NCBI RefSeq assembly: GCF_964194025.1
Contig: NC_134482.1
Location: forward strand, 38,874,001 to 38,938,000
DNA: 64,000 nt
Origin: Convolutriloba macropyga
Taxonomy: Eukaryota
Direction: 5' to 3'
The number at the start of each line of letters is the position of its first letter. Position 1 is the stretch's first letter. Shown here one piece after another: positions 1-15,875 of the stretch. The notes under the pieces are model-generated. The model worked only from the letters and a program-made list of their open reading frames with translations. It had not been told where the DNA came from and did no database searches. A program made the translations under genes and the position numbers.

Positions 1-3000
1 AAATCAAATTACTTTCCTCCTGTTGCCTGAAGCTATTACACAAGTAATGGTTTCGAATGTTTAGACTCATAACGCAAGTTGTGGGTCGTCACATTCAATT
101 TGAATTTCTTTGAAATATATATTTTCATTCTTGTATAAATTTCAAATCATATGCTTAAAATCAAATTACTTTCCTCCTGTTGCCTGAAGCTATTACACAA
201 GTAATGGTTTCTAGTGTTTAGGCTCATAACGCAAGTTATGGGTCGTCACATTCCGGTTTGAATCTCTTTGGGATATATGTTAAATCTTGAAGTATAAATT
301 TTAAACTACTTGCATTAAATCTAATAACTTTCTTCTAGTTGCCTGAAGCTATTACACAAGTAATGGTTTCAAATGTTTAGACTCATAACGCAAGTTGTGG
401 GTCGTCACATTCAATTTGAATTTCTTTGAAATATATATTTTCATTCTTGTATAAATTTCAAATCATATGCTTAAAATCAAACTAATTTCCTCCTGTTGCC
501 TGAAGCTATTGCACAAGTAATGGTTTCTAGTGTTCAGGCTCATAACGCAAGTTGTGGGTCGTCACATTCAATTTGATTTTCTTTGAGATATGTATTTTCA
601 TTCTTGTGGTATAAATTTCAAAACATATGCTTAAAATCAAACTAATTTCCTCCTGTTGCCTGAAGCTATTGCACAAGTAATGGTTTCTAGTGTTTAGGCT
701 CATAACGCAAGTTATGGGTCGTCACATTCAATTTGAATTTCTTTGAAATATATATTTTCATTCTTGTATAAATTTCAAATCATATGCTTAAAATCAAATT
801 ACTTTCCTCCTGTTGCCTGAAGCTATTACACAAGTAATGGTTTCGAATGTTTAGACTCATAACGCAAGTTGTGGGTCGTCACATTCAATTTGAATTTCTT
901 TGAAATATATATTTTCATTCTTTTATAAATTTCAAATCATATGCTTAAAATCAAATTACTTTCCTCCTGTTGCCTGAAGCTATTACACAAGTAATGGTTT
1001 CTAGTGTTTAGGCTCATAACGCAAGTTATGGGTCGTCACATTCCGGTTTGAATCTCTTTGGGATATATGTTAAATCTTGAAGTATAAATTTTAAACTACT
1101 TGCATTAAATCTAATAACTTTCTTCTAGTTGCCTGAAGCTATTACACAAGTAATGGTTTCAAATGTTTAGACTCATAACGCAAGTTGTGGGTCGTCACAT
1201 TCAATTTGAAATTCTTTGAAATATATATTTTCATTCTTGCATAAATTTCAAATCATATGCTTAAAATCAAATTACTTTCCTCCTGTTGCCTGAAGCTGTT
1301 ACACAAGTAATGGTTTCTAGTGTTTAGGCTCATAACACAAGTTATGGGTTGTCACATGCCGGTTTGAATTCCTTTGAGATATATATTTTTATTCTTGTGG
1401 TATAAATTTCAAAACATATGTTTGAAATCAAATTACTTTCCTCCTGTTGCCTGAAGCTATTACACAAGTAATGGTTTCTAGTGTTTAGGTTCATAACGCA
1501 AGTTATGGGTCGTCACATTCCGGTTTGAATCTCTTTGGGATATAAGTTAAATCTTGAAGTATAAATTTTAAACTACTTGCATTAAATCTAATAACTTTCT
1601 TCTAGTTGCCTGAAGCTATTACACAAGTAATGGTTTCGAATGTTTAGACTCATAACGCAAGTTGTGGGTCGTCACATTCAATTTGAATTTCTTTGAAATA
1701 TATATTTTCATTCTTGTATAAATTTCAAAACATATGCTCGAAATCAAATTACTTTCCTCCTGTTGCCTGAAGCTGTTACACAAGTAATGGTTTCTAGTGT
1801 TTAGGCTCATAACACAAGTTATGGGTTGTCACATGCCGGTTTGAATTCCTTTGAGATATATACTTTTATTCTTGTGGTATAGATTTCAAAACATATGCTT
1901 GAAATCAAATTACTTTCCTCCTGTTGCCTGAAGCTTTTACACAAGTAATGGTTTCTAGTGTTTAGGCTCATAACGCAAGTTATGGGTCGTCACATTCAAT
2001 TTGAATTTCTTTGAGATATGTATTTTCATTCTTGTTGTATAAATTTCAAAACACATGCTTAAAATCAAACTAATTTCCTCCTGTTGCCTGAAGCTATTGC
2101 ACAGGTAATGGTTTCTAGTGTTTAGGCTCATAACGCAAGTTGTGGGTCGTCACATTCAATTTGAATTTCTTTGAGATATGTATTTTCATTCTTGTGGTAT
2201 AAATTGCAAAACATATGCTTAAAATCAAACTAATTTCCTGCTGTTGCCTGAAGCTATTGCACAAGTAATGGTTTCTAGTGTTTAGGCTCATAACGCAAGT
2301 TATGGGTCGTCATATTCAATTTGAATTTCTTTGAGATATATATTTTCATTCTTGTGGTATAAATTTCAAAACATATGCTTAAAATCAAACTAATTTCCTC
2401 CTGTTGCCTGAAGCTTTTACACAAGTAATGGTTTTGTAGTGTTTAGGCTCATAACGCAAGTTATGGGTCGTCATATTCCGGTTTGAATCCCTTTGGGATA
2501 TGTGTTAAATCTTGAAGTATAAATTTTAAACTACTTGCCTTAAATCTAATAACTTTCTTCTAGTTGCCTGAAGCTATTACACAAGTAATGGTTTCGAATG
2601 TTTAGACTCATAACGCAACCTGTGGGTCGTCACATTCAATTTGAATTTCTTTGAGATATGTATTTTCATTCTTGTGGTATAAATTTCAAAGAATATGCTT
2701 AAAATCAAACTAATTTCCTCCTGTTGCCTGAAGCTATTGCACAAGTAATGGTTTCTAGTGTTCAGGCTCATAACGCAAGTTATGGGTTGTCACATTCCGG
2801 TTTGAATTCCTTTGAGATATATACTTTCATTCTTGTGGTATAGATTTGAAAACATATGCTTGAAATCAAATTACTTTCCTCCTGTTGCCTGAAGCTTTTA
2901 CACAAGTAATGGTTTCTAGTGTTTAGGCTCATAACGCAAGTTATGGGTCGTCATATTCCGGTTTGAATCCCTTTGGGATATGTGTTAAAACTTGAAGTAT

Positions 3001-6000
3001 ATATTTGAAACTACTTGCCTTAAATCTAATAACTTTCTTCTAGTTGCCTGAAGCTATTACACAAGTAATGGTTTCGAATGTTTAGACTCATAACGCAAGT
3101 TGTGGGTCGTCACATTCAATTTGAATTTCTTTGAGATATATGTTAATTCTTGAGGTATAAATTTCAAAACATATGCTTAAAATCAAATTACTTTCCTCCT
3201 GTTGCCTGAAGCTATTACACAAGTAATGGTTTTTAGTGTTTAGGCTCATAACGCAAGTTATGGTTCGTCATTTTCCGGTTTGAATCCCTTTCGGATATGT
3301 GTTAAATCTTGAAGTATAAATTTTAAACTATTTGCCCAAAATCTAATAACTTTCTTCTAGTTGCCTGAAGCTAATACACAAGTAATGGTTTCTAGTGTTT
3401 AGGTTCATAACGCAAGTTATGGGTCGTCACATTCCGGTTTGAATCTATTTGGGATATATGTTAAATCTTGAAGTATAAATTTTAAACTACTTGCATTAAA
3501 TCTAATAACTTTCTTCTAGTTGCCTGAAGCTATTACACAAGTAATGGTTTCGAATGTTTAGACTCATAACGCAAGTTGTGGGTCGTCACATTCAATTTGA
3601 ATTTCTTTGAAATATATATTCATTCTTGTATAAATTTCAAAACATATGCTCGAAATCAAATTACTTTTCCTCCTGTTGCCTGAAGCTGTTACACAAGTAA
3701 TGGTTTCTAGTGTTTAGGCTCATAACACAAGTTATGGGTTGTCACATGCCGGTTTGGATTCCTTTGAGATATATTTTTTTATTCTTGTGTTATAAATTTC
3801 AAAACATATGCTTGAAATCAAATTACATTCCTCCTGTTGCCTGAAGCTATTACACAAGTAATGGTTTCTAGTGTTTAGGCTCATAACGCAAGTTATGGGT
3901 CGTCACATTCCGTTTTGAATCTCTTTGGGATATATGTTAAATCTTGAAGTATAAGTTTTAAACTTTTTGCACATAATCTAATAACTTTATTCTAGTTGCC
4001 TGAAGCTATTACTCAAGTAATGGTTTCGAATATTTAGACTCATAACGCAAGTTGTGGGTCGTCACATTCAATTTGAATTTCTTTGAAATATATATTCATT
4101 CTTGTATAAATTTCAAAACATATGCTCGAAATCAAATTACTTTCCTCCTGTTGCCTGAAGCTGTTACACAAGTAATGGTTTCTAGTGTTTAGGCTCATAA
4201 CACAAGTTATGGGTTGTCACATGCCGGTTTGGATTCCTTTGAGATATATTTTTTTATTCTTGTGGTATAAATTTCAAAACATATGCTTGAAATCAAATTA
4301 CTTTCCTCCTGTTGCCTGAAGCTATTACACAAGTAATGGTTTCTAGTGTTTAGGCTCATAACGCAAGTTATGGGTCGTCACATTCCGGTTTGAATCTCTT
4401 TGGGATATATGTTAAATCTTGAAGCATAAGTTTTAAACTTTTTGCACAAAATCTAATAACTTTATTCTAGTTGCCTGAAGCTATTACTCAAGTAATGGTT
4501 TCGAATGTTTAGACTCATAACGCAAGTTGTGGGTCGTCACATTCAATTTGAATTTCTTCGAGATATGTATTTTCATTCTTGAGGTATAAATTTCAAAACA
4601 TATGCTTTAAATCAAACTAATTTCCTCCTGTTGCCTGAAGCTATTGCACAAGTAATGGTTTCTAGTGTTTAGGCTCATAACGCAAGGTATGGGTTGTCAC
4701 ATTCCGGTTTGAATTCCTTTGAGATATATACTTTCATTTTTGTGGTATAGATTTCAAAACATATGCTTGAAATCAAATTACTTTCCTCCTGTTGCCTGAA
4801 GCTTTTACACAAGTAATGGTTTCTAGTGTTTAGGCTCATAACGCAAGTTATGGGTCGTCATATTCCGGTTTGAATCCCTTTGGGATATGTGTTAAATCTT
4901 GAAGTATAAATTTTAAACTACTTGCCTTAAATCTAATAACTTTCTTCTAGTTGCCTGAAGCTATTACACAAGTAATGGTTTCGAATGTTTAGACTCATAA
5001 CGCAAGTTGTGGGTCGTCACAATCAATTTGAATTTCTTTGAGATATATGTTAATTCTTGAGGTATAAATTTCAAAACATATGCTTAAAATCAAATTACTT
5101 TCCTCCTGTTGCCTGAAGCTATTACACAAGTAATGGTTTTTAGTGTTTAGGCTCATATCGCAAGTTATGGTTCGTCATTTTCCGGTTTGAATCCCTTTGG
5201 GATATGTGTTAAATCTTGAAGTATAAATTTTAAACTACTTGCCTTAAATCTAATAACTTTCTTCTAGTTGCCTGAAGCTATTACACAAGTAATGGTTTCG
5301 AATGTTTAGACTCATAACGCAAGTTGTGGGTCGTCACATTCAATTTGAATTTCTTTGAGATATGTGTTTTCATTCTTGTGGTATACATTTCAAAACATAT
5401 GCTTAAAATCAAATTACTTTCCTCCTGTTGCCTGAAGCTATTACACAAGTAATGGTTTCTAGTGTTTAGGCTCATAACGCAAGTTATGGGTCGTCACATT
5501 CCGGTTTCAATCTCTTTGGGATATAAGTTAAATCTTGAAGTATAAATTTTAAACTATTTGCCAAAAATCTAATAACTTTCTTTCTTGTTGCCTGAAGCTA
5601 TTACACAAGTAATGGTTTCGAATGTTTAGACTCATAACGAAAGTTGTGGGTCGTCACATTCAATTTGAATTTCTTTGAGATATAGGTTAATTCTTGAGGT
5701 ATAAATTTCAAAACATATGCTTAAAATCAAATTACTTTCCTCCTGTTGCCTAAAGCTATTACACAAGTAATTGTCTCTAGTATTTAGACTCATAACGCAA
5801 GTTATGGGTCGTCACATTCCGGTTTGAATCTCTTTGGGATATATGTTAAATCTTGAAGCATAAATTTTAAACTACTTGCATTAAAGCTAATAACTTTCTT
5901 CTAGTTGCCTGAAGCTATTACACAAGTAATGGTTTCGAATGTTTAGACTCATAACGCAAGTTGTGGGTCGTCACATTCAATTTGAATTTCTTTGAAATAT

Positions 6001-9000
6001 ATATTTTCATTCTTGTATAAATTTCAAATCATATGCTTAAAATCAAATTACTTTCCTCCTGTTGCCTGAAGCTATTACACAAGTAATGGTTTCTAGTGTT
6101 TAGGCTCATAACGCAAGTTATGGGTCGTCAGATTCCGGTTTGAATCTCCTTGGGATATATTTTAAATCTTGAAGTATTAATTTTAAACTATTTGCCAAAA
6201 ATCCAATAACTTCCTTTCTTGTTGGCTGAAGCTATTACACAAGTAATGGTTTCTAGTGTTTAGGCTCATAACGCAAGTTATGGGTCGTCATATTCCGGTT
6301 TGAATCCCTTTGGGATATGTGTTAAATCTTGAAGTATAAATTTTAAACTACTTGCCTTAAATCTAATAACTTTCTTCTAGTTGCCTGAAGCTATTACACA
6401 AGTAATGGTTTCGAATGTTTAGACTCATAACGCAAGTTGTGGGTCGTCACATTCAATTTGAATTTCTTTGAGATATATGTTAATTCTTGAGGTATAAATT
6501 TCAAAACATATGCTTAAAATCAAATTACTTTCCTCCTGTTGCCTGAAGCTATTACACAAGTAATGTTTTTAGTGTTTAGGCTCATATCGCAAGTTATGGT
6601 TCGTCATTTTCCGGTTTGAATCCCTTTGGGATATGTGTTAAATCTTGAAGTATAAATTTTAAACTACTTGCCTTAAATCTAATAACTTTCTTCTAGTTGC
6701 CTGAAGCTATTACACAAGTAATGGTTTCGAATGTTTAGACTCATAACGCAAGTTGTGGGTCGTCACATTCAATTTGAATTTCTTTGAGATATGTGTTTTC
6801 ATTCTTGTGGTATACATTTCAAAACATATGCTTAAAACCAAATTACTTTCCTCCTGTTGCCTGAAGCTATTACACAAGTAATGGTTTCTAGTGTTTAGGC
6901 TCATAACGCAAGTTATGGGTCGTCACATTCCGGTTTGAATCTCTTTGGGATATATGTTAAATCTTGAAGTATAAATTTTAAACTATTTGCCAAAAATCTA
7001 ATAACTTTCTTTCTTGTTGCCTGAAGCTATTACACAAGTAATGGTTTCGAATGTTTAGACTCATAACGAAAGTTGTGGGTCGTCACATTCAATTTGAATT
7101 TCTTTGAGATATAGGTTAATACTTGAGGTATAAATTTCAAAACATATGCTTAAAATCAAATTACTTTCCTCCTGTTGCCTAAAGCTATTACACAAGTAAT
7201 TGTCTCTAGTATTTAGACTCATAACGCAAGTCATGGGTCGTCACATTCCGGTTTGAATCTCTTTGGGATATATGTTAAATCTTGAAGCATAAATTTTAAA
7301 CTACTTGCATTAAAGCTAATAACTTTCTTCTAGTTGCCTGAAGCTATTACACAAGTAATGGTTTCGAATGTTTAGACTCATAACGCAAGTTGTGGGTCGT
7401 CACATTCAATTTGAATTTCTTTGAAATATATATTTTCATTCTTGTATAAATTTCAAATCATATGCTTAAAATCAAATTACTTTCCTCCTGTTGCCTGAAG
7501 CTATTACACAAGTAATGGTTTCTAGTGTTTAGGCTCATAACGCAAGTTATGGGTCGTCAGATTCCGGTTTGAATCTCCTTGGGATATATTTTAAATCTTG
7601 AAGTATAAATTTTAAACTATTTGCCAAAAATCCAATAACTTCCTTTCTTGTTGGCTGAAGCTATTACACAAGTAATGGTTTCGAATGTTTAGATTCATAA
7701 CGCAAGTTATGGTTCGTCACATTCAATTTGAGTTTCTTAGAGATAAATGTTAATTCTTGAGGTATAATTTTCAAAACATGCCTAAAATCAAATTACTTCT
7801 AGTTGCCTGAAGCTATTACACAAGTAATGGTTTCGAAAGTTTAGACTCATAACGCAAGTTGTGGGTCGTCACATTCAATTTGAGTTTCTTTGAATTAAAT
7901 GCTAATTATTGAGGTATAATTTTCAAAACATGCCTAAAATGAAATTAATTTCCTCCTGCTGCCTGAAGCTATTACACAAGTAATGGTTTCTAGTGTTTAG
8001 GCTCATAACGCAAGTTATGGGTCGTCACATTCAATTTGAGTTTCTTTGAATTAAATGCTAAGTATTGAGGTATAATTTTCAAAACATGCCTAAAATCAAA
8101 TTAATTTCCTCCTGTTGCCTGAAGCTATTACACAAGTAATGGTTTCTAGTGTTTAGGCTCATAACGCAAGTTATGGGTCGTCACATTCAATTTGAGTTTC
8201 TTCGAATTAAATGCTAATTATTCAGGTATAATTTTCAAAACATGCCTAAAATCAAATTAATTTCCTCGTATTGCCTGAAGCTATTACACAAGTAATGGTT
8301 TCTAGTGTTTAGGCTCATAACGCAAGTTATGGGTCGTCACATTCAATTTGAGTTTCTTTGAATTAAATGCTAAAATCAAATTAATTTCCTCCTGTTGCCT
8401 GAAGCTATTACACAAGTAATGGTTTCTAGTGTTTAGGCTCATAACGCAAGTTATGGGTCGTCACATTCAATTTGAGTTTCTTTGAATTAAATGCTAAGTA
8501 TTGAGGTATAATTTTCAAAACATGCCTAAAATCAAATTAATTTCCTCCTGTTGCCTGAAGCTATTACACAAGTAATGGTTTCTAGTGTTTAGGCTCATAA
8601 CGCAAGTTATGGGTCGTCACATTCAATTTGAGTTTCTTCGAATTAAATGCTAATTATTTAGGTATAATTTTCAAAACATGCCTAAAATCAAATTAATTTC
8701 CTCGTGTTGCCTGAAGCTATTACACAAGTAATGGTTTCTAGTGTTTAGGCTCATAACGCAAGTTATGGGTCGTCACATTCAATTTGAGTTTCTTTGAATT
8801 AAATGCTAAAATCAAATTAATTTCCTCCTGTTGCCTGAAGCTATTACACAAGTAATGGTTTCTAGTGTTTAGGCTCATAACGCAAGTTATGGGTCGTCAC
8901 ATTCAATTTGAGTTTCTTCGAATTAAATGCTAATTATTTAGGTATAATTTTCAAAACATGCCTAAAATCAAATTAATTTCCTCCTGTTGCCTGAAGCTAT

Positions 9001-9270
9001 TACACAAGTAATGGTTTCTAGTGTTTAGGCTCATAACGCAAGTTATGGGTCGTCACATTCAATTTGAGTTTCTTTGAATTAAATGCTAAGTATTGAGGTA
9101 TAATTTTCAAAACATGCCTAAAATCAAACTAATTTCCTCCTGTTGCCTGAAGCTATTACACAAGTAATGGTTTCGAATGTTTAGACTCATAACGCAAGTT
9201 GTGGGTCCTCACATTCAATTTGATTTTCTTTGAGATATATTTTAATTCTTGAGGTTTAAATTTATACGAT
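1..9270 (+). repeat. Tandem satellite array, ~156-160 bp monomer, ~58 copies, three monomer subtypes with higher-order repeats; continues off the left edge
   Basis: Core GTTGCCTGAAGCTATTACACAAGTAATGGTTTC...CTCATAACGCAAGTT(A/G)TGGGTCGTCACATT recurs at 22, 179, 338 and so on (e.g. 2403, 2563, 2723), the last near 9142. The remaining ~85 bp alternates between an A type (CAATTTGAATTTC...TTCCTCCT) and a B type (CCGGTTTGAATC...TTCTTCTA); a C type (~156 bp) occupies ~7740-9140. Confidence 0.97.
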
Positions 9271-9280
9271 ATCTTATTAT

Positions 9281-9895
9281 ATGATTTTCTTTGAGGTTAA
9301 TGTTCAGTATTGTTTCTCTTTCCTTAGACAAGAATCGTATTCGTCGGAGATTCTAATCTCCGTGATGCTGAGGGGCTGCTTGCTCTAAACGAGCGAGTTC
9401 GCCGTTATCGGTAAGTATTGTGTTATGTTGTTGGCTTTATCATGTAAATTTACTGACTTTTCTCTTGCTTTTTGCAGCCCGTCTTATAATTGCCAGGGCG
9501 GCCGGAGATCCATTCATCTCAGAGCATTGACCAGTGATCTTCTGAAATACACTCACGTTTTCATCATTTGCGGTGACAACGATTTAAACTCATCGAAAGT
9601 TGACGAAATCTGTAGAAACTTTGAATATGTCATTAAAGCGCTGCATCCGCGCATTGTTAGATTTAGTGGCTTTTTGCCCAGAGCGGATTTTGATCCGGAT
9701 CTGAGGACTAAAAGTAATCTTTATTTAGCTGAAAAGCTTAAAGATAGATACAAAAGCCCGAGACTTATAAAGAAAAGCGACTTTGACGCGAAGGGTAGAG
9801 ACAAGTTTCACCTTCGGCACACAAAAAATGGACTCAATCACATGATGCAGCACTGTTTAAGCTTTCTAGTTGACTCTTTTGGTGAATTACTATAA
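9281..9895 (+). CDS. Spliced SGNH/GDSL-family hydrolase (esterase/lipase fold), ~170 aa; exons 9328-9410 and 9478-9895, with a tentative first exon 9281-9295
   Basis: Exon 9328-9410 follows ...tttccttag and reads TRIVFVGDSNLRDAEG...RRYR (block I GDS). The 67 nt intron 9411-9477 has GTAAGT, a TACTGAC branch point, a pyrimidine tract and CAG, and joins in frame to the 9425-9895 ORF: PSYNCQGG (block II G), HVFIICGDND (block III GxND), GRDKFHL (block V DxxH). The start is uncertain: ATG at 9281 plus a 32 nt GT-AG intron (9296-9327) is in frame. Confidence 0.85.
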
Positions 9896-10045
9896 AAACT
9901 GAGCTTTAAATATGAGCTTCTGAAAAACTGAGCTATCTGAACTCTTCCTTTGTAGTTGTTCTAAAAGATTTCTTTGTAATTGCAATCTTCTGCCTTGTGT
10001 TTTTCTTTCTTTAGGGGAAGAAGATGCAGCAACATTTGATCCGCT

Positions 10046-10462
10046 NNNNNNNNNNNNNNNNNNNNNNNNNNNNNNNNNNNNNNNNNNNNNNNNNNNNNNN
10101 NNNNNNNNNNNNNNNNNNNNNNNNNNNNNNNNNNNNNNNNNNNNNNNNNNNNNNNNNNNNNNNNNNNNNNNNNNNNNNNNNNNNNNNNNNNNNNNNNNNN
10201 NNNNNNNNNNNNNNNNNNNNNNNNNNNNNNNNNNNNNNNNNNNNNNNNNNNNNNNNNNNNNNNNNANNNNNNNNNNNNNNNNNNNNNNNNNNNNNNNNNN
10301 NNNNNNNNNNNNNNNNNNNNNNNNNNNNNNNNNNNNNNNNNNNNNNNNNNNNNNNNNNNNNNNNNNNNNNNNNNNNNNNNNNNNNNNNNNNNNNNNNNNN
10401 NNNNNNNNNNNNNNNNNNNNNNNNNNNNNNNNNNNNNNNNNNNNNNNNNNNNNNNNNNNNNN
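10046..10462. other. Assembly gap (N run)
   Basis: Run of N with a single called base. Confidence 0.99.
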
Positions 10463-10935
10463 TATTCCCATTATTATTTCACTTTTATTATAATTTTTTT
10501 GTTGTTCGTCCTATTCTTTCTCTTTTTCTTGTTCTTGTTCTTCTATTCTTAATTTTTTATTCTTCTTGTTTTTGTTCCNNNNNNNNNNNNNNNNNNNNNN
10601 NNNNNNNNNNNNNNNNNNNNNNNNNNNNNNNNNNNNNNNNNNNNNNNNNNNNNNNNNNNNNNNNNNNNNNNNNNNNNNNNNNNNNNNNNNNNNNNNNNNN
10701 NNNNNNNNNNNNGTTATTATTTTTATTATTTTTTTATTATTGTTTTTAATTTTATTATTCTTATTCTTATTATTCTCATTATTAGATCACTTATATTATA
10801 ATTTTTTTGTTGTTTGTCTTATTCTTTCTCTTATTCTTGGTCTTATTCTTCGTCTTATTCTTAATTTTTTATTCTTCGTGTTTTTGTTCCAATTTTTATT
10901 CTTCTCAGCATTCGTATTCTTTTTCTTATTACTAT
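10463..10935. repeat. Low-complexity (TTA/TTC/TTG)n tract; a similar tract lies at ~11375-11630
   Basis: Degenerate triplet repeats that produce the spurious poly-L/F/I ORFs. Confidence 0.85.
10579..10712. other. Assembly gap (N run)
   Basis: Run of N. Confidence 0.99.
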
Positions 10936-10939
10936 CATT

Positions 10940-11950
10940 TGCAAAAGATATTGCGATCAAGATTTTTGTGAAAGAAGATATTGCAATCGGTATTTTTGCG
11001 AAAGATTTTGCGATCGAAATATTCCAAAAGATATTGCGATGAAAAGTTTTGCGAAAGATAGTGCGCTCAAAAGTATTGCGGAAGAAATTGCGATCAAAAT
11101 ATTGCAACCGAGTTTTGCGAAAGAAGTTATTGAGACCGAATTTTTTTGTTGAAGAAGATATTGCGGTCGAAATTTTCGATAAGCAGTATCTTGTTTTGCA
11201 ATATCTTTGCCAATATTTTGATTCCATTGCCTTCTTTCGTAAATTCGTTAGCAATAACATTTTTCGCAAAATGTTTTATTGCAGCATCGTGTGCAAAATC
11301 TTTGCTCTATTTTGATCAGAATATCTTCATTTGCAAAAACTTCCGTCGCAATATCTTTCGCAAATTTTGTTTGATTTGTTTTTATTAATATATTAATATT
11401 TTTACGATTTTTATTTTTGGAAATTACTATTACTATTATTGTTGCTGTTGTTCTTCTTATCATTGTTCTTATTTTTATTGTTTTTATTATTATTCTTATT
11501 TTTTCTGTTACTCTTATTCTTGTTCTCCTTGTTCTTGTTCTTATTCTTCTTCTAATTCTTGTTTTCTGTGTTATTCTGCTTCTTGTTTTTGTTCTTATTC
11601 CTATTCGTTTTCTTACTCTTACCATTATTATTTGCAAAAGATATTACGGTCAGAATTTTTGTGAAAGACGATTTTGTGATCGAAATTATTGCAAAAAAAT
11701 TTTGCGAAAGAAGATATTGCGATTGAAATTTTTGCGAAAGAACATATTGCGATCAAATTGTTTGCGAAAGAAGATATAGCGATTAAAATATTGCGAACAA
11801 TTTTTGCGAGAGAAGATATAGCGATTGAAGTATTGCAAACGACTTATGTGAAAGCAGATATTGCGGTCAAAACTTTTCCGAAAGAACATATTGTGGAAGA
11901 AGATATTGCGATAAAATTGTTTGCGAAAGAAGATATAGCGATTAAATTAA
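10940..11950. repeat. Degenerate ~30-33 bp minisatellite (GCGAAAGAAGATATTGCGAT...) in both orientations, interrupted by a low-complexity tract
   Basis: Motif on + at ~10940-11180 and ~11630-11950; inverted copies (CGCAATATCTT) at ~11190-11370. Confidence 0.8.
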
Positions 11951-14605
11951 TACGATGTTCGTATGTTTCTTTAGTGTGTTCTCGTTTTCTTCGGTTTTTT
12001 TTTCGTTCTGACCCCAAAAACCTTAAACCATAGTCAATTAGGTCTTAAAAGACAAGCATTTTTGTGTTTGGGGTCAAAAACGAAAAAAAAATTAACTCTG
12101 ATGACTTTATTTTTAAACGCGATGTTCATATGTTTCTTTACTGTGTTCTCGTTTTCTTCTGTTTTTCTTCGTTCTGACCCCAGAAACAGTAAATCATAGT
12201 CAATTTGGTCTTGAAAAACTAGGATTTTCATTTTTGGGTTCAAAAACGAAATAAAATCAACTCTATTGTCTTTATTTTTAAATACGATGTTCATATGTTT
12301 CTATAGTGTGTTCTTGTTTTCTTTGATGTTTTTATGTTCTGAACCCAAAATCTTAAATCATATTCAATTTGGTCTTAAAAGACTAGCTTTTTTGTGTTTG
12401 GGGTCAGAAACGAAAAAAAAATCACCGCTTTTGACTTTATTTTTAAATACGATGTTCGTATGTTTCTTTAGTGTGTTCTCGTTTTCTTCGGTTTTTTTTT
12501 CGTTCTGACCCCAAAAACCTTAAACCATAGTCAATTAGGTCTTAAAAGACAAGCATTTTTGTGTTTGGGTCAAAAACGAAAAAAAAATTAACTCTGATGA
12601 CTTTATTTTAAACGCGATGTTCATATGTTTCTTTACTGTGTTCTCGTTTTCTTCTGTTTTTCTTCGTTCTGACCCCAAAAACAATAAATCATAGTCAATT
12701 TGGTCTCGAAAAACTAGGATTTTCATTTTTGGGTTCAAAAACGAAATAAAATCAACTCTATTGTCTTTAATTTTAAATACGATGTTCATATGTTTCTATA
12801 GTGTGTTCTTGTTTTCTTTGATGTTTTTATGTTCTGAACCCAAAATCTTAAATCATATTCAATTTGGTCTTAAAAGACTAGCTTTTTTGTGTTTGGGGTC
12901 AGAAACGAAAAAAAATCACCGCTTTTGACTTTATTTTGAAATAAGATGTTCGTATGTTTCCTTAGTGTGTTCTCGTTTTCTTCGGTTTTTTTTTCGTTCT
13001 GACCCCAAAAACCTTAAACAATAGTCAATTAGGTCTTAAAAGACAAGCATTTTTGTGTTTGGGGTCAAAAACGAAAAAAAATTAACTCTGATGACTTTAT
13101 TTTTAAACGCGATGTTCATATGTTTCTTTACTGTGTTCTCGTTTTCTTCTGTTTTTCTTCGTTCTGACCCCAGAAACAATAAATCATAGTCAATTTGGTC
13201 TTGAAAAACTAGGATTTTCATTTTTGGGTTCAAAAACGAAATAAAATCAACTCTATTGTCTTTATTTTTAAATACGATGTTCATATGTTTCTATAGTGTG
13301 TTCTTGTTTTCTTTGATGTTTTTATGTTCTGAACCCAAAATCTTAAATCATAATCAATCTGGTCTTAAAAGACTAGCTTTTTTGTGTTTGGGGTCAAAAA
13401 CGAAAAAAAAATCACCGCTTTTGACTTTATTTTTAAATACGATGTTCGTATGTTTCTTTAGTGTGTTCTCGTTTTGTTTGGTTTTTTTTTCGTTCTGACC
13501 CCAAACAGTTTAAATCATAACCAATTTTGTCTTAAAAGAAAAGCATTTTTGTGTTTGGGGTCAAAAACGAAAAAAAAATCAGTTCTGATGCCTTTATATT
13601 TTGAATACGATGCCTCTATTCTTCTTTTTCGTGTTCTTCTTTAGCTGTTTTTTTTTCGTTTTGACCCAAAAACCGTCTAATAATACTTTACTTGCCTTTA
13701 AAAAACGACTAATTTTTCTCTGGGTCAAAAACGAAAAAAAAAATCAGCTCTGATGCCTTTATATTTTGAATACGATGCCTCTATTTTTCTTTTTCGAGTT
13801 CTTCTTTAGCTGTTTTTTTTTCCGTTTTGACCCAAAAACCGTCTAATAATACTTTACTTGCCTTTAAAAAATGATTAATTTTTCTCTGGGTCAAAAACGA
13901 AAAAAAAACCAGTTCTGATGCCTTTATATTTTGAATACGATGCCTCTATTTTTCTTTTTCGTGTTCTTCTTTAGCTGTTTTTTTTTCGTTTTGACCCAAA
14001 AACCGTCTAATAATACTTTACTTGCCTTTAAAAAACGATTAATTTTTCTCTGGGTCAAAAACGAAAAAAAAAATCAGCTCTGATGCCTTTATATTTTGAA
14101 TACGATGCCTCTATTTTTCTTTTTCGTGTTCTTCTTTAGCTGTTTTTTTTGTTTTGACCCAAAAACCGTCTAATAATACTTTACTTGCCTTTAAAAAATG
14201 ATTAATTTTTCTCTGGGTCAAAAACGAAAAAAAAATCAGCTCTGATGCCTTTATATTTTGAATACGATGCCTCTATTTTTCTTTTTCGTGTTCTTCTTTA
14301 GCTGCTTTTTTTTCGTTTTGACCCAAAAACCGTCTAATAATACTTTACTTGCCTTTAAAAAACGACTAATTTTTCTCTGGGTCAAAAACGAAAAAAAAAT
14401 CAGCTCTGATGCCTTTATATTTTGAATACGATGCCTCTATTTTTCTTTTTCCTGTTCTTCTTTAGCCGTTTTTTTTGTTTTGACCCAAAAACCGTCTAAT
14501 AATACTTTACTTGCCTTTAAAAAATGATTAATTTTTCTCTGGGTCAAAAACGAAAAAAAAATCAGCTCTGATGCCTTTATATTTTGAATACGATGCCTCT
14601 ATTTT
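11950..14605. repeat. Tandem satellite, ~165 bp monomer, ~16 copies, each monomer with an internal inverted repeat; two subfamilies
   Basis: TACGATG-type anchor at 11951, ~12118, 12283, 12448 ... 13606, 13771, 13936, 14101, 14263, 14427, 14589. Arms TTTTTTCGTT(C/T)TGACCC and GGGTCAAAAACGAAAAAA occur in each unit. 11950-13600 is a ~496 bp trimer HOR; 13600-14605 is a homogeneous second variant. Confidence 0.95.
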
Positions 14606-14774
14606 TTTATGTCTTTAATTTAAAAAAATTATGTCTTTAAATTTTGTCGGTGTTTTTATACTTTTTGGTCGCTTGCGGCCAATTCAGTGTTGTAGTACTC
14701 TTTTTTAACTGAGTATAGGAAAACAGCTTTTGTTGCTTTTTTGAGGTCCTGTTGATTTTTTTTGCAAGGTCTGC

Positions 14775-15240
14775 CGGCCATTTTTGACGTTTTTTCGATC
14801 AGTTTTGACCTTTTTTTCGGCTATTTTTGACCTTTTTTTCGGCCATTTTTGACGTTTTTTCGATCAGTTTTGACCTTTTTTTCGGCTATTTTTGACATTT
14901 TTTTCGGCCATTTTGGACGTTTTTTCGATCAGTTTTGACCTTTTTTTCGCCTATTTTTGACCTTTTTTTCGGCCATTTTTGACGTTTTTTCGATCAGTTT
15001 TGACCTTTTTTTCGGCTATTTTTGACCTTTTTTTCGGCCATTTTTGACGTTTTTTCGATCAGTTTTGACCTTTTTTTCGGCTATTTTTGACCTTTTTTTC
15101 GGCCATTTTCGACGTTTTTTCGATCAGTTTTGACCTTTTTTTTTCGGCTATTTTTGACCTTTTTTTCGGCCATTTTTGACGTTTTTTCGATCAGTTTTGA
15201 CCTTTTTTTCGGCTATTTTTGACCTTTTTTTCGGCCATTT
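14775..15240. repeat. 65 bp minisatellite (three ~21-22 bp subunits), ~7 copies
   Basis: GGCCATTT recurs at ~65 bp spacing from 14776 to 15233. Confidence 0.95.
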
Positions 15241-15242
15241 GA

Positions 15243-15475
15243 GACTGGATTAAGACTTGGCAAGTCTTGGCCAAGACTTGGATTAAGACTTGCCAAGTCT
15301 TGGCCAAGACTTGGGTTAAGACTTGGCAAGTCTTGGCCAAGACTTGGATTAAGACTTGGCAAGTCTTGGCCAAGACTTGGATTAAGACTTGGCAAGTCTT
15401 GGCCAAGACTTGGATTAAGACTTGCCAAGTCTTGGCCAAGACTTGGATTAAGACTTGCCAAGTCTTGGCCAAGTC
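15243..15475. repeat. 33 bp palindromic minisatellite, ~7 copies
   Basis: Unit GACTTGGATTAAGACTTG(G/C)CAAGTCTTGGCCAA; the array contains the perfect palindrome CAAGTCTTGGCCAAGACTTG. Confidence 0.95.
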
Positions 15476-15875
15476 TGACAAGTCTTAAATGTGTTATGAT
15501 CATAGCTCTGAATCAGTACTGATACCTAGACTTGCAATTAGACTTGCCCAGTACTGATATTGACTTGGCGTTAAGTACGGGACTGTAACAAAGACAAATG
15601 GTGAATATTCTTTGTCGGTATAACTTTCAATAAAACGTTCAATAAATGAAAATCAAAATTGAACGAGTCAATTTTGTATTTATAATTTTAGCTGGCTGTT
15701 TTTCATTTCAGCTGGAGGTTGGAAAACAAAATTGAAATGCAAATTCAGATTCTGCTTCAATTTTTCTGTTTAACCATGAATCATTGAAATAGTGAAAAAA
15801 TGTTACATTGATCCTTTAAAAAAAGGAAATGAAACTATTTCTCTGGTAATTGATCCAACGTCATCAAACTCAAAC

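What the first reader, a model, noticed from the sequence alone, without database searches (positions are those of the whole stretch)
1..9270. The 160 bp satellite monomer looks like a strand-specific structured RNA (or ssDNA) module
Seen: on the + strand the conserved core folds as hairpin 1, GAAGCTATTAC-ACAA-GTAATGGTTTC (11 pairs, two G.U). It is immediately followed by GAATGT-[3x3 loop]-GACTCATAAC-GCAA-GTTGTGGGTC-[loop]-ACATTC, a 10 bp stem capped by a GNRA tetraloop. The frequent variants swap Watson-Crick and G.U pairs (GAC/GGC, GTTG/GTTA, TTAC/TTGC, CTAT/CTGT, AATGT/AGTGT) or change only the loop (GCAA to GAAA or ACAA); a minority break pairs. The variable half can form a third long hairpin with different sequences in type A (TTTGAA...TTCAAA) and type B (GGTTTGAA...TTTAAACT). 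On the minus strand these positions would be A.C mismatches, so the fold is strand-specific. Inference: a tandem array of a structured ncRNA or hairpin substrate rather than neutral satellite. It loosely resembles SL-RNA architecture (donor-like AA|GTAA in stem-loop 1, U-rich AATTTGA after stem-loop 2), but I recognise no known family.
Basis: partly seen in the sequence, partly recalled or inferred. Interest (0 to 1): 0.75.

Follow-up and report, generated by a model that had tools for sequence, protein, structure and literature searches.

The report
Hairpin repeat array inside giant transposon
The "160-bp satellite" is not free satellite DNA: it is a 12-kb tandem array carried inside a 32-kb jumping gene of the acoel worm Convolutriloba macropyga, its repeat unit folds into two hairpins on one strand only, the common sequence variants keep that fold, and whether it acts as RNA could not be tested.

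Summary
Observation confirmed. Window 1-9262 holds 59 monomers of 156-161 bp (two are cut to 124 bp). Each has a conserved 75-nt core that folds on the + strand into the two hairpins described (core z = -6.9; minus strand z = -1.8).

The context changes the reading. The array is 12.4 kb and starts 3.2 kb before the window. It is an internal block of a 32,063-bp CACTA/EnSpm-type DNA transposon with 20-bp inverted ends, 2-bp target duplications and a SET-domain/Tnp2 transposase. The array always lies between the transposase ORF and an SGNH-hydrolase exon, on the same strand. At least 30 copies are 95-99% alike. The roughly 2,000 monomers in the assembly match that copy number. The scan had already found this transposon family on other DNA.

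Structured-RNA reading: partly supported.
- Rfam gives no match.
- No base pair shows a change on both sides.
- Among transitions at Watson-Crick pairs, all sites split 28 G.U-forming to 31 A.C-forming. Those at 5% frequency or more split 14 to 2 (p 0.002), and unpaired sites show no such bias.

The spliced-leader idea is refuted: the known acoel leader occurs about 2,600 times in this genome. No RNA run could be found, so transcription remains untested.

The parts
1..9262 (+). Tandem array of 59 monomers of 156-161 bp (two cut to 124 bp). It is the 3' three quarters of a 12,423-bp array that starts at L034:6840, 3,160 bp before the window. Positions 1-7780 form a roughly 476-bp three-monomer higher-order repeat. 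Positions 7934-9233 form a 436-bp repeat (156+156+124).
819..844 (+). Hairpin 1 of one type A monomer (monomer 791-947): 11 pairs, two of them G.U, with an ACAA loop. It recurs in every monomer.
845..886 (+). Hairpin 2 of the same monomer: 6-bp outer stem, 3x3 internal loop, 10-bp inner stem (854-877) with a GCAA loop.
9328..9410 (+). SGNH-hydrolase exon carrying the GDS block. It follows a pyrimidine tract and AG (9326-9327). The in-frame stop at 9325-9327 sits directly before it and there is no ATG, so it must be spliced to something upstream. The exon borders are inferred from the sequence only.
9478..9895 (+). Second SGNH exon, with GGR, GDND and D..H blocks. It follows a GT-AG intron at 9411-9477 (inferred). 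Pfam gives no match for this piece.
9263..10045 (+). Unique transposon segment directly after the array. It is present at 33 places at 86-100% identity (31 of them at 92% or more), and 8 further matches are weaker or partial. In all 12 loci fetched, the array lies just upstream on the same strand.
10713..15561 (+). 3' part of the transposon. It consists of further tandem repeats: 27-45-bp units at 10938-11941, a 165-bp unit x16 at 11949-14595, 22/65-bp units at 14775-15240, and 33-bp subterminal units with AGACTTG/CAAGTCT motifs at 15242-15473. The N block at 10046-10712 was not read.
15562..15581 (+). 3' terminal inverted repeat, ending ...GTACGGG. It is followed by the 2-bp target duplication AC (15582-15583). 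Six other copies lose homology within a few bases of this point (window 15581-15592), and the printed ends of all seven copies finish on the same GTACGGG.

Best explanation
The 160-bp array is an internal block of a recently active 32-kb CACTA/EnSpm-type cut-and-paste transposon of Convolutriloba macropyga.

Shown:
- It lies 134 bp after the stop of the SET-domain/Tnp2 transposase ORF and directly before an SGNH-hydrolase exon. All are on the + strand.
- It travels with every copy examined.
- Each monomer has a conserved 75-nt core that forms two hairpins on the + strand only.

Statistical: in the lineage that gave rise to the copies, only changes that keep + strand pairing through G.U became common. 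The mutations seen as rare variants, which are mostly decay after insertion, are not biased.

Inferred:
- The array is transcribed as part of a + strand precursor of the element. The SGNH exon has a splice acceptor and no start codon, so the array would be an intron or an outron.
- The repeated double hairpin acts in that RNA as a multi-copy binding or processing platform for a protein of the element or the host. The conserved core and variable U/A-rich spacer resemble Xist repeat A.
- A role as + strand single-stranded DNA hairpins is not excluded.
For: - Transposon context: the flank 9263-10045 occurs at 30 or more loci at 95-99% identity, always with the array upstream. The 8.3 kb upstream of the array is 98-99% identical in four copies. 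Copies share precise ends, inverted ends and 2-bp duplications AC, AT and TT.
- Transposase: SET domain at E 1.5e-6. Homologues carry PF02992 Tnp2, PF06869 and PF00856.
- Fold: + strand z is -6.9 to -3.5, minus strand -1.8 to +0.8.
- Direction of change: 14 G.U-forming against 2 A.C-forming transitions at 5% frequency or more, p 0.002. Common versus rare gives Fisher p 0.00026. Unpaired sites split 7 to 9. For the core alone the split is 6 to 0.
- Other repeats of the same element lack the asymmetry.
- The SGNH exon has no start codon and is preceded by a splice acceptor.
Against: - No pair has changes on both sides (0, against 2.0 expected from shuffles). The paired fraction is 94.4% against 94.5% shuffled, and the covariation score is not above shuffles.
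- No Rfam family matches.
- The core is limited to about 2,000-2,100 monomers of one young family, so there is no deep conservation.
- The strand and the helices were chosen after seeing the data.
- Some common changes are adjacent (AA to GG) and may be single events.
- One of the two A.C cases depends on the alignment.
- There is no evidence of transcription. The four runs found are DNA: contigs cross the putative intron unspliced, and their total length is about the genome size.
- A possible polyadenylation signal (AATTAAA) lies between the transposase stop and the array.
Confidence: 0.45

Rival explanations
1. Neutral transposon-borne tandem repeat. A short segment inside the element was amplified by slippage and unequal crossing-over. 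The hairpins are leftover imperfect palindromes. At most they promote expansion as DNA secondary structure during replication. The G.U bias is chance combined with choosing the strand after the fact.
For: - The same element holds at least five other tandem-repeat families. One of them has a long palindrome.
- Array length varies between copies, from under 10 kb to 15 kb.
- There are no compensatory changes.
- The core is not found outside this family.
- Satellites born from CACTA elements are known (PMC7320549, PMC8978399).
Against: - Common variants split 14 to 2, rare variants 14 to 29 and unpaired sites 7 to 9.
- All mismatches in the consensus stems are G.T on the + strand. None is A.C and none is a transversion.
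- The core is much more conserved than the other half of the monomer.
Confidence: 0.33
2. An array of double-stranded DNA binding sites. The conserved core holds short palindromes (ATTAC..GTAAT and CATAAC..GTTATG). These would be bound by a sequence-specific protein, for example the DNA-binding proteins that earlier notes of this scan report in the same element. Each transposon copy would thereby gain a protein-coated block of nucleosome-length units.
For: - The pattern of a conserved core and a variable spacer resembles satellites with protein boxes.
- The unit length is about 160 bp.
- The element encodes a SET domain and a weak HMG-like ORF.
- Earlier notes report BEN-fold genes in the family. 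This was not tested here.
Against: - A duplex site gives no reason for strand-specific G.T against A.C changes.
- The perfect palindromes are only 5-6 bp.
- The similarity of the two hairpins to each other is not significant (303 of 2000 shuffles score as well).
Confidence: 0.17
3. A tandem array of genes for a known small RNA: spliced-leader RNA, a self-cleaving ribozyme satellite, or a snoRNA.
For: - There is a donor-like AA|GUAA in hairpin 1 and AAUUUGA after hairpin 2.
- The arrangement is tandem, as in many spliced-leader RNA and ribozyme satellites.
Against: - The canonical acoel leader is a different sequence and is present about 2,600 times (PMC9911081).
- No Rfam match at E up to 10, including all ribozyme and snoRNA families.
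- By eye there is no hammerhead core and no H/ACA or C/D boxes.
- The array lies inside a transposon.
Confidence: 0.03

Closest known systems
Internal and subterminal tandem repeats of CACTA/EnSpm (CMC superfamily) transposons, and satellites derived from them (for example Chenopodium, PMC7320549 and PMC8978399)
   Same: Tnp2-type transposase, short inverted ends, 2-bp target duplication, repeated subterminal motifs, and long internal tandem arrays that move with the element.
   Different: - This is an animal (acoel) element of 32 kb with a SET domain joined to the transposase.
- The array is 10-15 kb.
- The monomer shows a strand-specific double hairpin with a G.U-only pattern of change, which I have not seen described for CACTA repeats.
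Xist repeat A and similar repeated stem-loop modules in long RNAs
   Same: Tandem units made of a conserved hairpin-forming core with a tetraloop, separated by a variable U/A-rich spacer. Many copies would act as a platform for proteins.
   Different: This is a resemblance of layout only. Here there is no evidence of transcription, no known partner protein, 60-95 copies instead of about 8, and a location inside a transposon.
Transcribed satellites with self-cleaving ribozymes (newt satellite 2, Schistosoma Sm-alpha, cave-cricket pDo500)
   Same: Tandem monomers of 150-350 bp with a strand-specific fold in a conserved part.
   Different: No hammerhead, HDV-like, twister, pistol or hatchet match in Rfam, and no catalytic core seen by eye.
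Spliced-leader RNA gene arrays
   Same: Tandem arrangement, a first stem-loop holding a GU donor-like site, and a U-rich stretch after the second stem-loop.
   Different: The species already has the leader known from Symsagittifera, identical in sequence. The monomer shares only GCCT with it.
Mouse L1 5' monomer arrays
   Same: A tandem array of roughly 200-bp units inside a mobile element, upstream of and on the same strand as a coding part.
   Different: L1 is a retrotransposon with 2-7 monomers that act as promoters. Here there are about 80 monomers in a DNA transposon, and promoter activity is untested.

Membership tests
CACTA/EnSpm (CMC) DNA transposon | Transposase of the Tnp2 / Transposase_21 type | tested here: met
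   The ORF at L034:5132-6706 has 92 homologues. Many carry PF02992 together with PF06869 and PF00856. Its own Pfam matches are SET at 1.5e-6 and a weak DUF1258 at 5e-4.
CACTA/EnSpm (CMC) DNA transposon | Terminal inverted repeats and a short (2-3 bp) target duplication | tested here: met
   The ends are CCCGTAC... and ...GTACGGG, about 20 bp and imperfect. The 2-bp duplications are AC, AT and TT in three copies. The ends do not read CACTA.
CACTA/EnSpm (CMC) DNA transposon | Many copies with identical boundaries at unrelated sites | tested here: met
   Six other copies lose homology within a few bases of one point (window 15581-15592), and the printed ends of all seven copies finish on GTACGGG. 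Three copies share the 5' end. The flanks are unrelated.
Free-standing satellite DNA | Arrays that exist independently of a mobile element | tested here: not met
   Every chromosomal array among the listed matches lies next to the transposon's SGNH segment. The one match on the small unplaced contig C3920 could not be paired with a listed SGNH hit. The 2,036 monomers in the assembly equal about 30 copies x 65 monomers.
Structured RNA supported by covariation | Base pairs kept through changes on both sides | tested here: not met
   0 of 27 pairs show this, against a shuffle mean of 2.0. The covariation score is 0.089 against 0.092.
Structured RNA supported by covariation | Excess of structure-compatible over structure-breaking substitutions | tested here: met
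   14 to 2 among common transitions, p 0.002. Rare variants split 14 to 29 and unpaired sites 7 to 9. The test was chosen after seeing the data.
Spliced-leader RNA | The leader matches the sequence found on the mRNAs of the species or its close relatives | tested here: not met
   The 32-nt leader of S. roscoffensis (PMC9911081) is present unchanged at 100 or more places and at 2,612 places with up to 3 mismatches. The control gives 0. It is absent from the window and from all fetched loci.
Spliced-leader RNA | The leader is found at the 5' ends of mRNAs | not testable with these tools
Any Rfam family (ribozymes, snoRNA, snRNA, tRNA-like) | Match to the covariance model | tested here: not met
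   cmscan of window 1-10000, both strands, at E up to 10: 0 matches.

The most novel reading that the evidence does not exclude
A giant DNA transposon carries its own array of about 80 structured RNA modules. These would be kept by selection in the active lineage and would act together with the element's SET-domain transposase and accessory DNA-binding proteins. For example, the array could be a repeat-RNA platform that brings the element's chromatin enzyme to its own locus: a transposon-encoded counterpart of Xist repeat A.
Probability: 0.1. Interest if true: 0.85.

Novelty: new variant of a known kind. Interest (0 to 1): 0.5.

Why it matters
Tandem arrays inside DNA transposons are usually treated as neutral filler or as the seed of new satellites. 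Here the changes that spread in the array keep base pairing on one strand only, while later decay does not. That points to a function for the transcript, or the single strand, of a transposon-borne repeat.

If RNA data confirm it, this would be a rare case of a cut-and-paste element that depends on a repeated structured RNA. It would also give a handle on what the unusual SET-domain transposase family of acoels does.

If RNA data are negative, the case is an ordinary transposon-borne repeat with an odd palindrome.

Tried and rejected
- Rfam at E up to 10 on both strands: nothing.
- Hammerhead, H/ACA and C/D boxes by eye: CUGAAG precedes hairpin 1, but there is no GAAA after it, no hinge and no ACA box. 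Rejected.
- Spliced-leader RNA: rejected.
- Coding repeat: rejected. The longest stop-free run is 33-48 aa on + and 70 aa on the minus strand, and monomer lengths are not multiples of three.
- Hairpins 1 and 2 as an internal duplication: 12 of 16 identities, not significant, 303 of 2000 shuffles score as well.
- Mutational strand bias as the cause of the G.U excess: unpaired sites split 7 to 9, so not supported.
- RNA evidence: the only runs found are DNA contigs.
- Diverged relatives of the element (SGNH matches at 72-77% identity) could not be fetched.
- A search for the SGNH protein in public assemblies found only genome contigs and no transcript-derived ones.
- The N block at 10046-10712 was left unread. 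Fetched loci of this and other copies carry letters there, and I did not print or analyse them.
- The SGNH exons were examined one by one.
Full report
**What is in the sequence**

Window 1-9262 is a head-to-tail array. TRF gives period 159 with 52.7 copies over 1-8361. It also gives higher-order periods of 476 (three monomers) and, from 7934, 436 (156+156+124). Anchoring on an 11-mer gave 59 monomers spaced 152-161 bp apart, plus two cut to 124 bp.

Positions 22-95 vary at only a few sites that define subtypes. Positions 96-158 vary at about every second site.

The stretch is non-coding. The longest stop-free run is 33-48 aa on + and 70 aa on the minus strand.

**The fold**

The two hairpins are the minimum-free-energy structure of the + strand.

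| Sequence | + strand RNA z | minus strand RNA z |
|---|---|---|
| 78-nt core | -6.9 (-33.4 kcal/mol, 90% of the ensemble) | -1.8 |
| Type A monomer | -6.2 | -1.0 |
| Type B monomer | -3.7 | +0.8 |
| Type C monomer | -3.5 | -0.6 |

With DNA parameters the + strand gives -3.1 and -2.4 and the minus strand about -1.

The asymmetry comes from G.U pairs. Pairs 32-51, 34-49 and 67-84 are G.U in 97-100% of monomers. No stem position is A.C in the consensus.

**What the array belongs to**

The 783 bp after the array (9263-10045) occur at 33 places at 86-100% identity, 31 of them at 92% or more. Eight further matches are weaker or partial. In all 12 loci fetched, the array lies directly upstream on the same strand, and homology continues beyond the N block.

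Fetching the surroundings of seven copies showed the following:
- The array starts at L034:6840, 3,160 bp before the window. It is 12.4 kb here, 10.9-15 kb in three other copies and under 10 kb in three more.
- The 8.3 kb upstream of it is 98-99% identical between copies. A 355-bp tandem repeat of variable copy number precedes that stretch.
- Six other copies lose homology within a few bases of window 15581, and the printed ends of all seven copies finish on the same letters.

The ends are inverted repeats (CCCGTAC... and ...GTACGGG). Repeated CAAGTCT motifs lie next to them. They are flanked by 2-bp duplications: AC here, AT and TT in two other copies. This copy spans C16:38857519-38889581, which is 32,063 bp.

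**Genes upstream of the array**

Upstream lie a 494-aa ORF with a SET domain (1.5e-6) and, after one stop codon in the same frame, a 524-aa ORF. Homologues of the second ORF carry Pfam Transposase_21 (Tnp2), DUF1258 and SET. The element is therefore a CACTA/EnSpm-type cut-and-paste transposon with a SET-domain transposase.

**Species**

The genome length of 1,175.98 Mb identifies the assembly as Convolutriloba macropyga (PMC13650328).

**Earlier notes of this scan**

After I had worked this out, earlier notes of this scan turned out to describe the same family on other DNA. They add BEN-fold genes, which I did not test.

**Abundance**

A 30-mer of hairpin 1 with up to 3 mismatches occurs 2,036 times, with control 0. 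That is about 30 copies times 65 monomers. A 19-mer gives 2,471 against a control of 312. No further, more diverged family carries this core. The array is therefore not a free satellite. It is confined to one young transposon family.

**Is the fold under constraint?**

- No pair has a change on both sides. Shuffles give 2.0 +/- 1.2.
- 94.4% of cells are paired, against 94.5% after shuffling.
- The covariation score is not above shuffles.

By the usual covariation standard there is no support. That is expected in a family this young.

*Direction-of-change test.* At a Watson-Crick pair a transition gives either G.U, which is tolerated on the + strand, or A.C, which is tolerated on the minus strand. 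Under neutrality the two are equally likely, whatever the linkage between sites. I used all helices of the type A fold and 462 monomers.

| Class of site | G.U-forming | A.C-forming | Test |
|---|---|---|---|
| All variant sites | 28 | 31 | mutational input unbiased |
| Common (5% frequency or more) | 14 | 2 | binomial p 0.002 |
| Rare | 14 | 29 | common vs rare: Fisher p 0.00026 |
| Unpaired sites, common (A>G or C>T against T>C or G>A) | 7 | 9 | no mutational strand bias |

For the two core hairpins alone, on an ungapped alignment, the common sites split 6 to 0.

The copies share the order of monomer variants near the 3' end of the array. Common variants therefore arose in the master lineage, and rare ones are mostly decay after insertion. 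The contrast is what selection on + strand pairing in the active element would produce.

*Caveats.*
- The strand and helices were chosen after seeing the data.
- Two of the common changes are adjacent pairs (AA to GG).
- One A.C case (T95C) depends on the alignment.
- There are only about a dozen independent events.

*Controls.* Two other tandem repeats of the same element behave differently. The 165-bp unit has a long palindrome that folds equally on both strands (z -4.0 and -4.6). The 355-bp unit does not fold.

**Known families**

Rfam gives no match at E up to 10. The spliced-leader idea is refuted. Acoels do trans-splice, and the 32-nt leader published for S. roscoffensis (PMC9911081) is present unchanged at 100 or more places here. 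With up to 3 mismatches it occurs at 2,612 places, with control 0. It shares only its first four letters with the monomer.

**Transcription**

This could not be tested. The single run search returned four runs of one study, of unknown kind. Laying them showed contigs crossing the putative SGNH intron unspliced, and their total contig length is about the genome size. They are therefore DNA.

The diverged relatives, which would give the best covariation test, could therefore not be read.

One indirect point bears on transcription. The SGNH exon at 9328 follows a pyrimidine tract and AG. An in-frame stop sits directly before it, and it has no ATG. It must therefore be spliced to something upstream. 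That makes a + strand precursor crossing the array plausible, but it is an inference.

**Verdict**

The array is cargo of a giant CACTA-type transposon (shown). Its monomer core is a strand-specific double hairpin (shown). The pattern of common versus rare changes suggests that pairing on the + strand mattered in the active lineage (moderate, post hoc). That it works as RNA is an inference, and what it does is unknown.

The main rival is a neutral transposon-borne repeat with leftover palindromes.

Noticed in passing
window 11949-14595: A second tandem repeat of the same transposon (165 bp x 16, with a 495-bp higher-order unit). Each unit holds a long inverted repeat of about 25 bp (T-run CGTTCTGACCCCAAA ... 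TTTGGGGTC ... A-run). It folds equally well on both strands (z -4.0 and -4.6).
   Followed up: partly
G000 genome-wide (for example C1:6265183-6265214): The 32-nt spliced leader published for Symsagittifera roscoffensis is present letter for letter in C. macropyga. It occurs at 2,612 dispersed places with up to 3 mismatches, far more than a usual spliced-leader RNA gene family. These may be leader RNA genes spread by a mobile element, or retrocopies of trans-spliced mRNAs.
   Followed up: no
L034:3638-6706 (upstream of the window): The SET-domain ORF (494 aa) and the transposase ORF (524 aa) are in the same frame, separated by one stop codon at L034:5123-5125. This copy is therefore either just broken or has a small intron there.
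   Followed up: no
window 9328-9895: The SGNH-hydrolase exons have the GDS, GGR, GDND and D..H blocks but no start codon of their own. The first exon begins at a splice acceptor. The gene may be an alternative 3' part of the transposase transcript, as with the two products of plant En/Spm.
   Followed up: partly
window 8809-10045 in runs X1-X4: In the DNA contigs the summed word depth over the monomer core is 250-660 times that over the SGNH segment. The assembly holds about 48 monomers per SGNH copy. The arrays may be under-assembled, but the tool warns that this depth is not a copy number.
   Followed up: no
L033:3519-10000 (5' part of the element): After the 5' end comes a 355-bp tandem repeat whose copy number differs between copies (ends at -13.3 kb here, -9.7 kb in two others). 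There are also two identical-length 131-aa ORFs 1,458 bp apart with no Pfam match.
   Followed up: no
window 10046-10712: Loci fetched from the genome, including the window's own place, carry letters where the window reads N. They were not read, printed or analysed.
   Followed up: no
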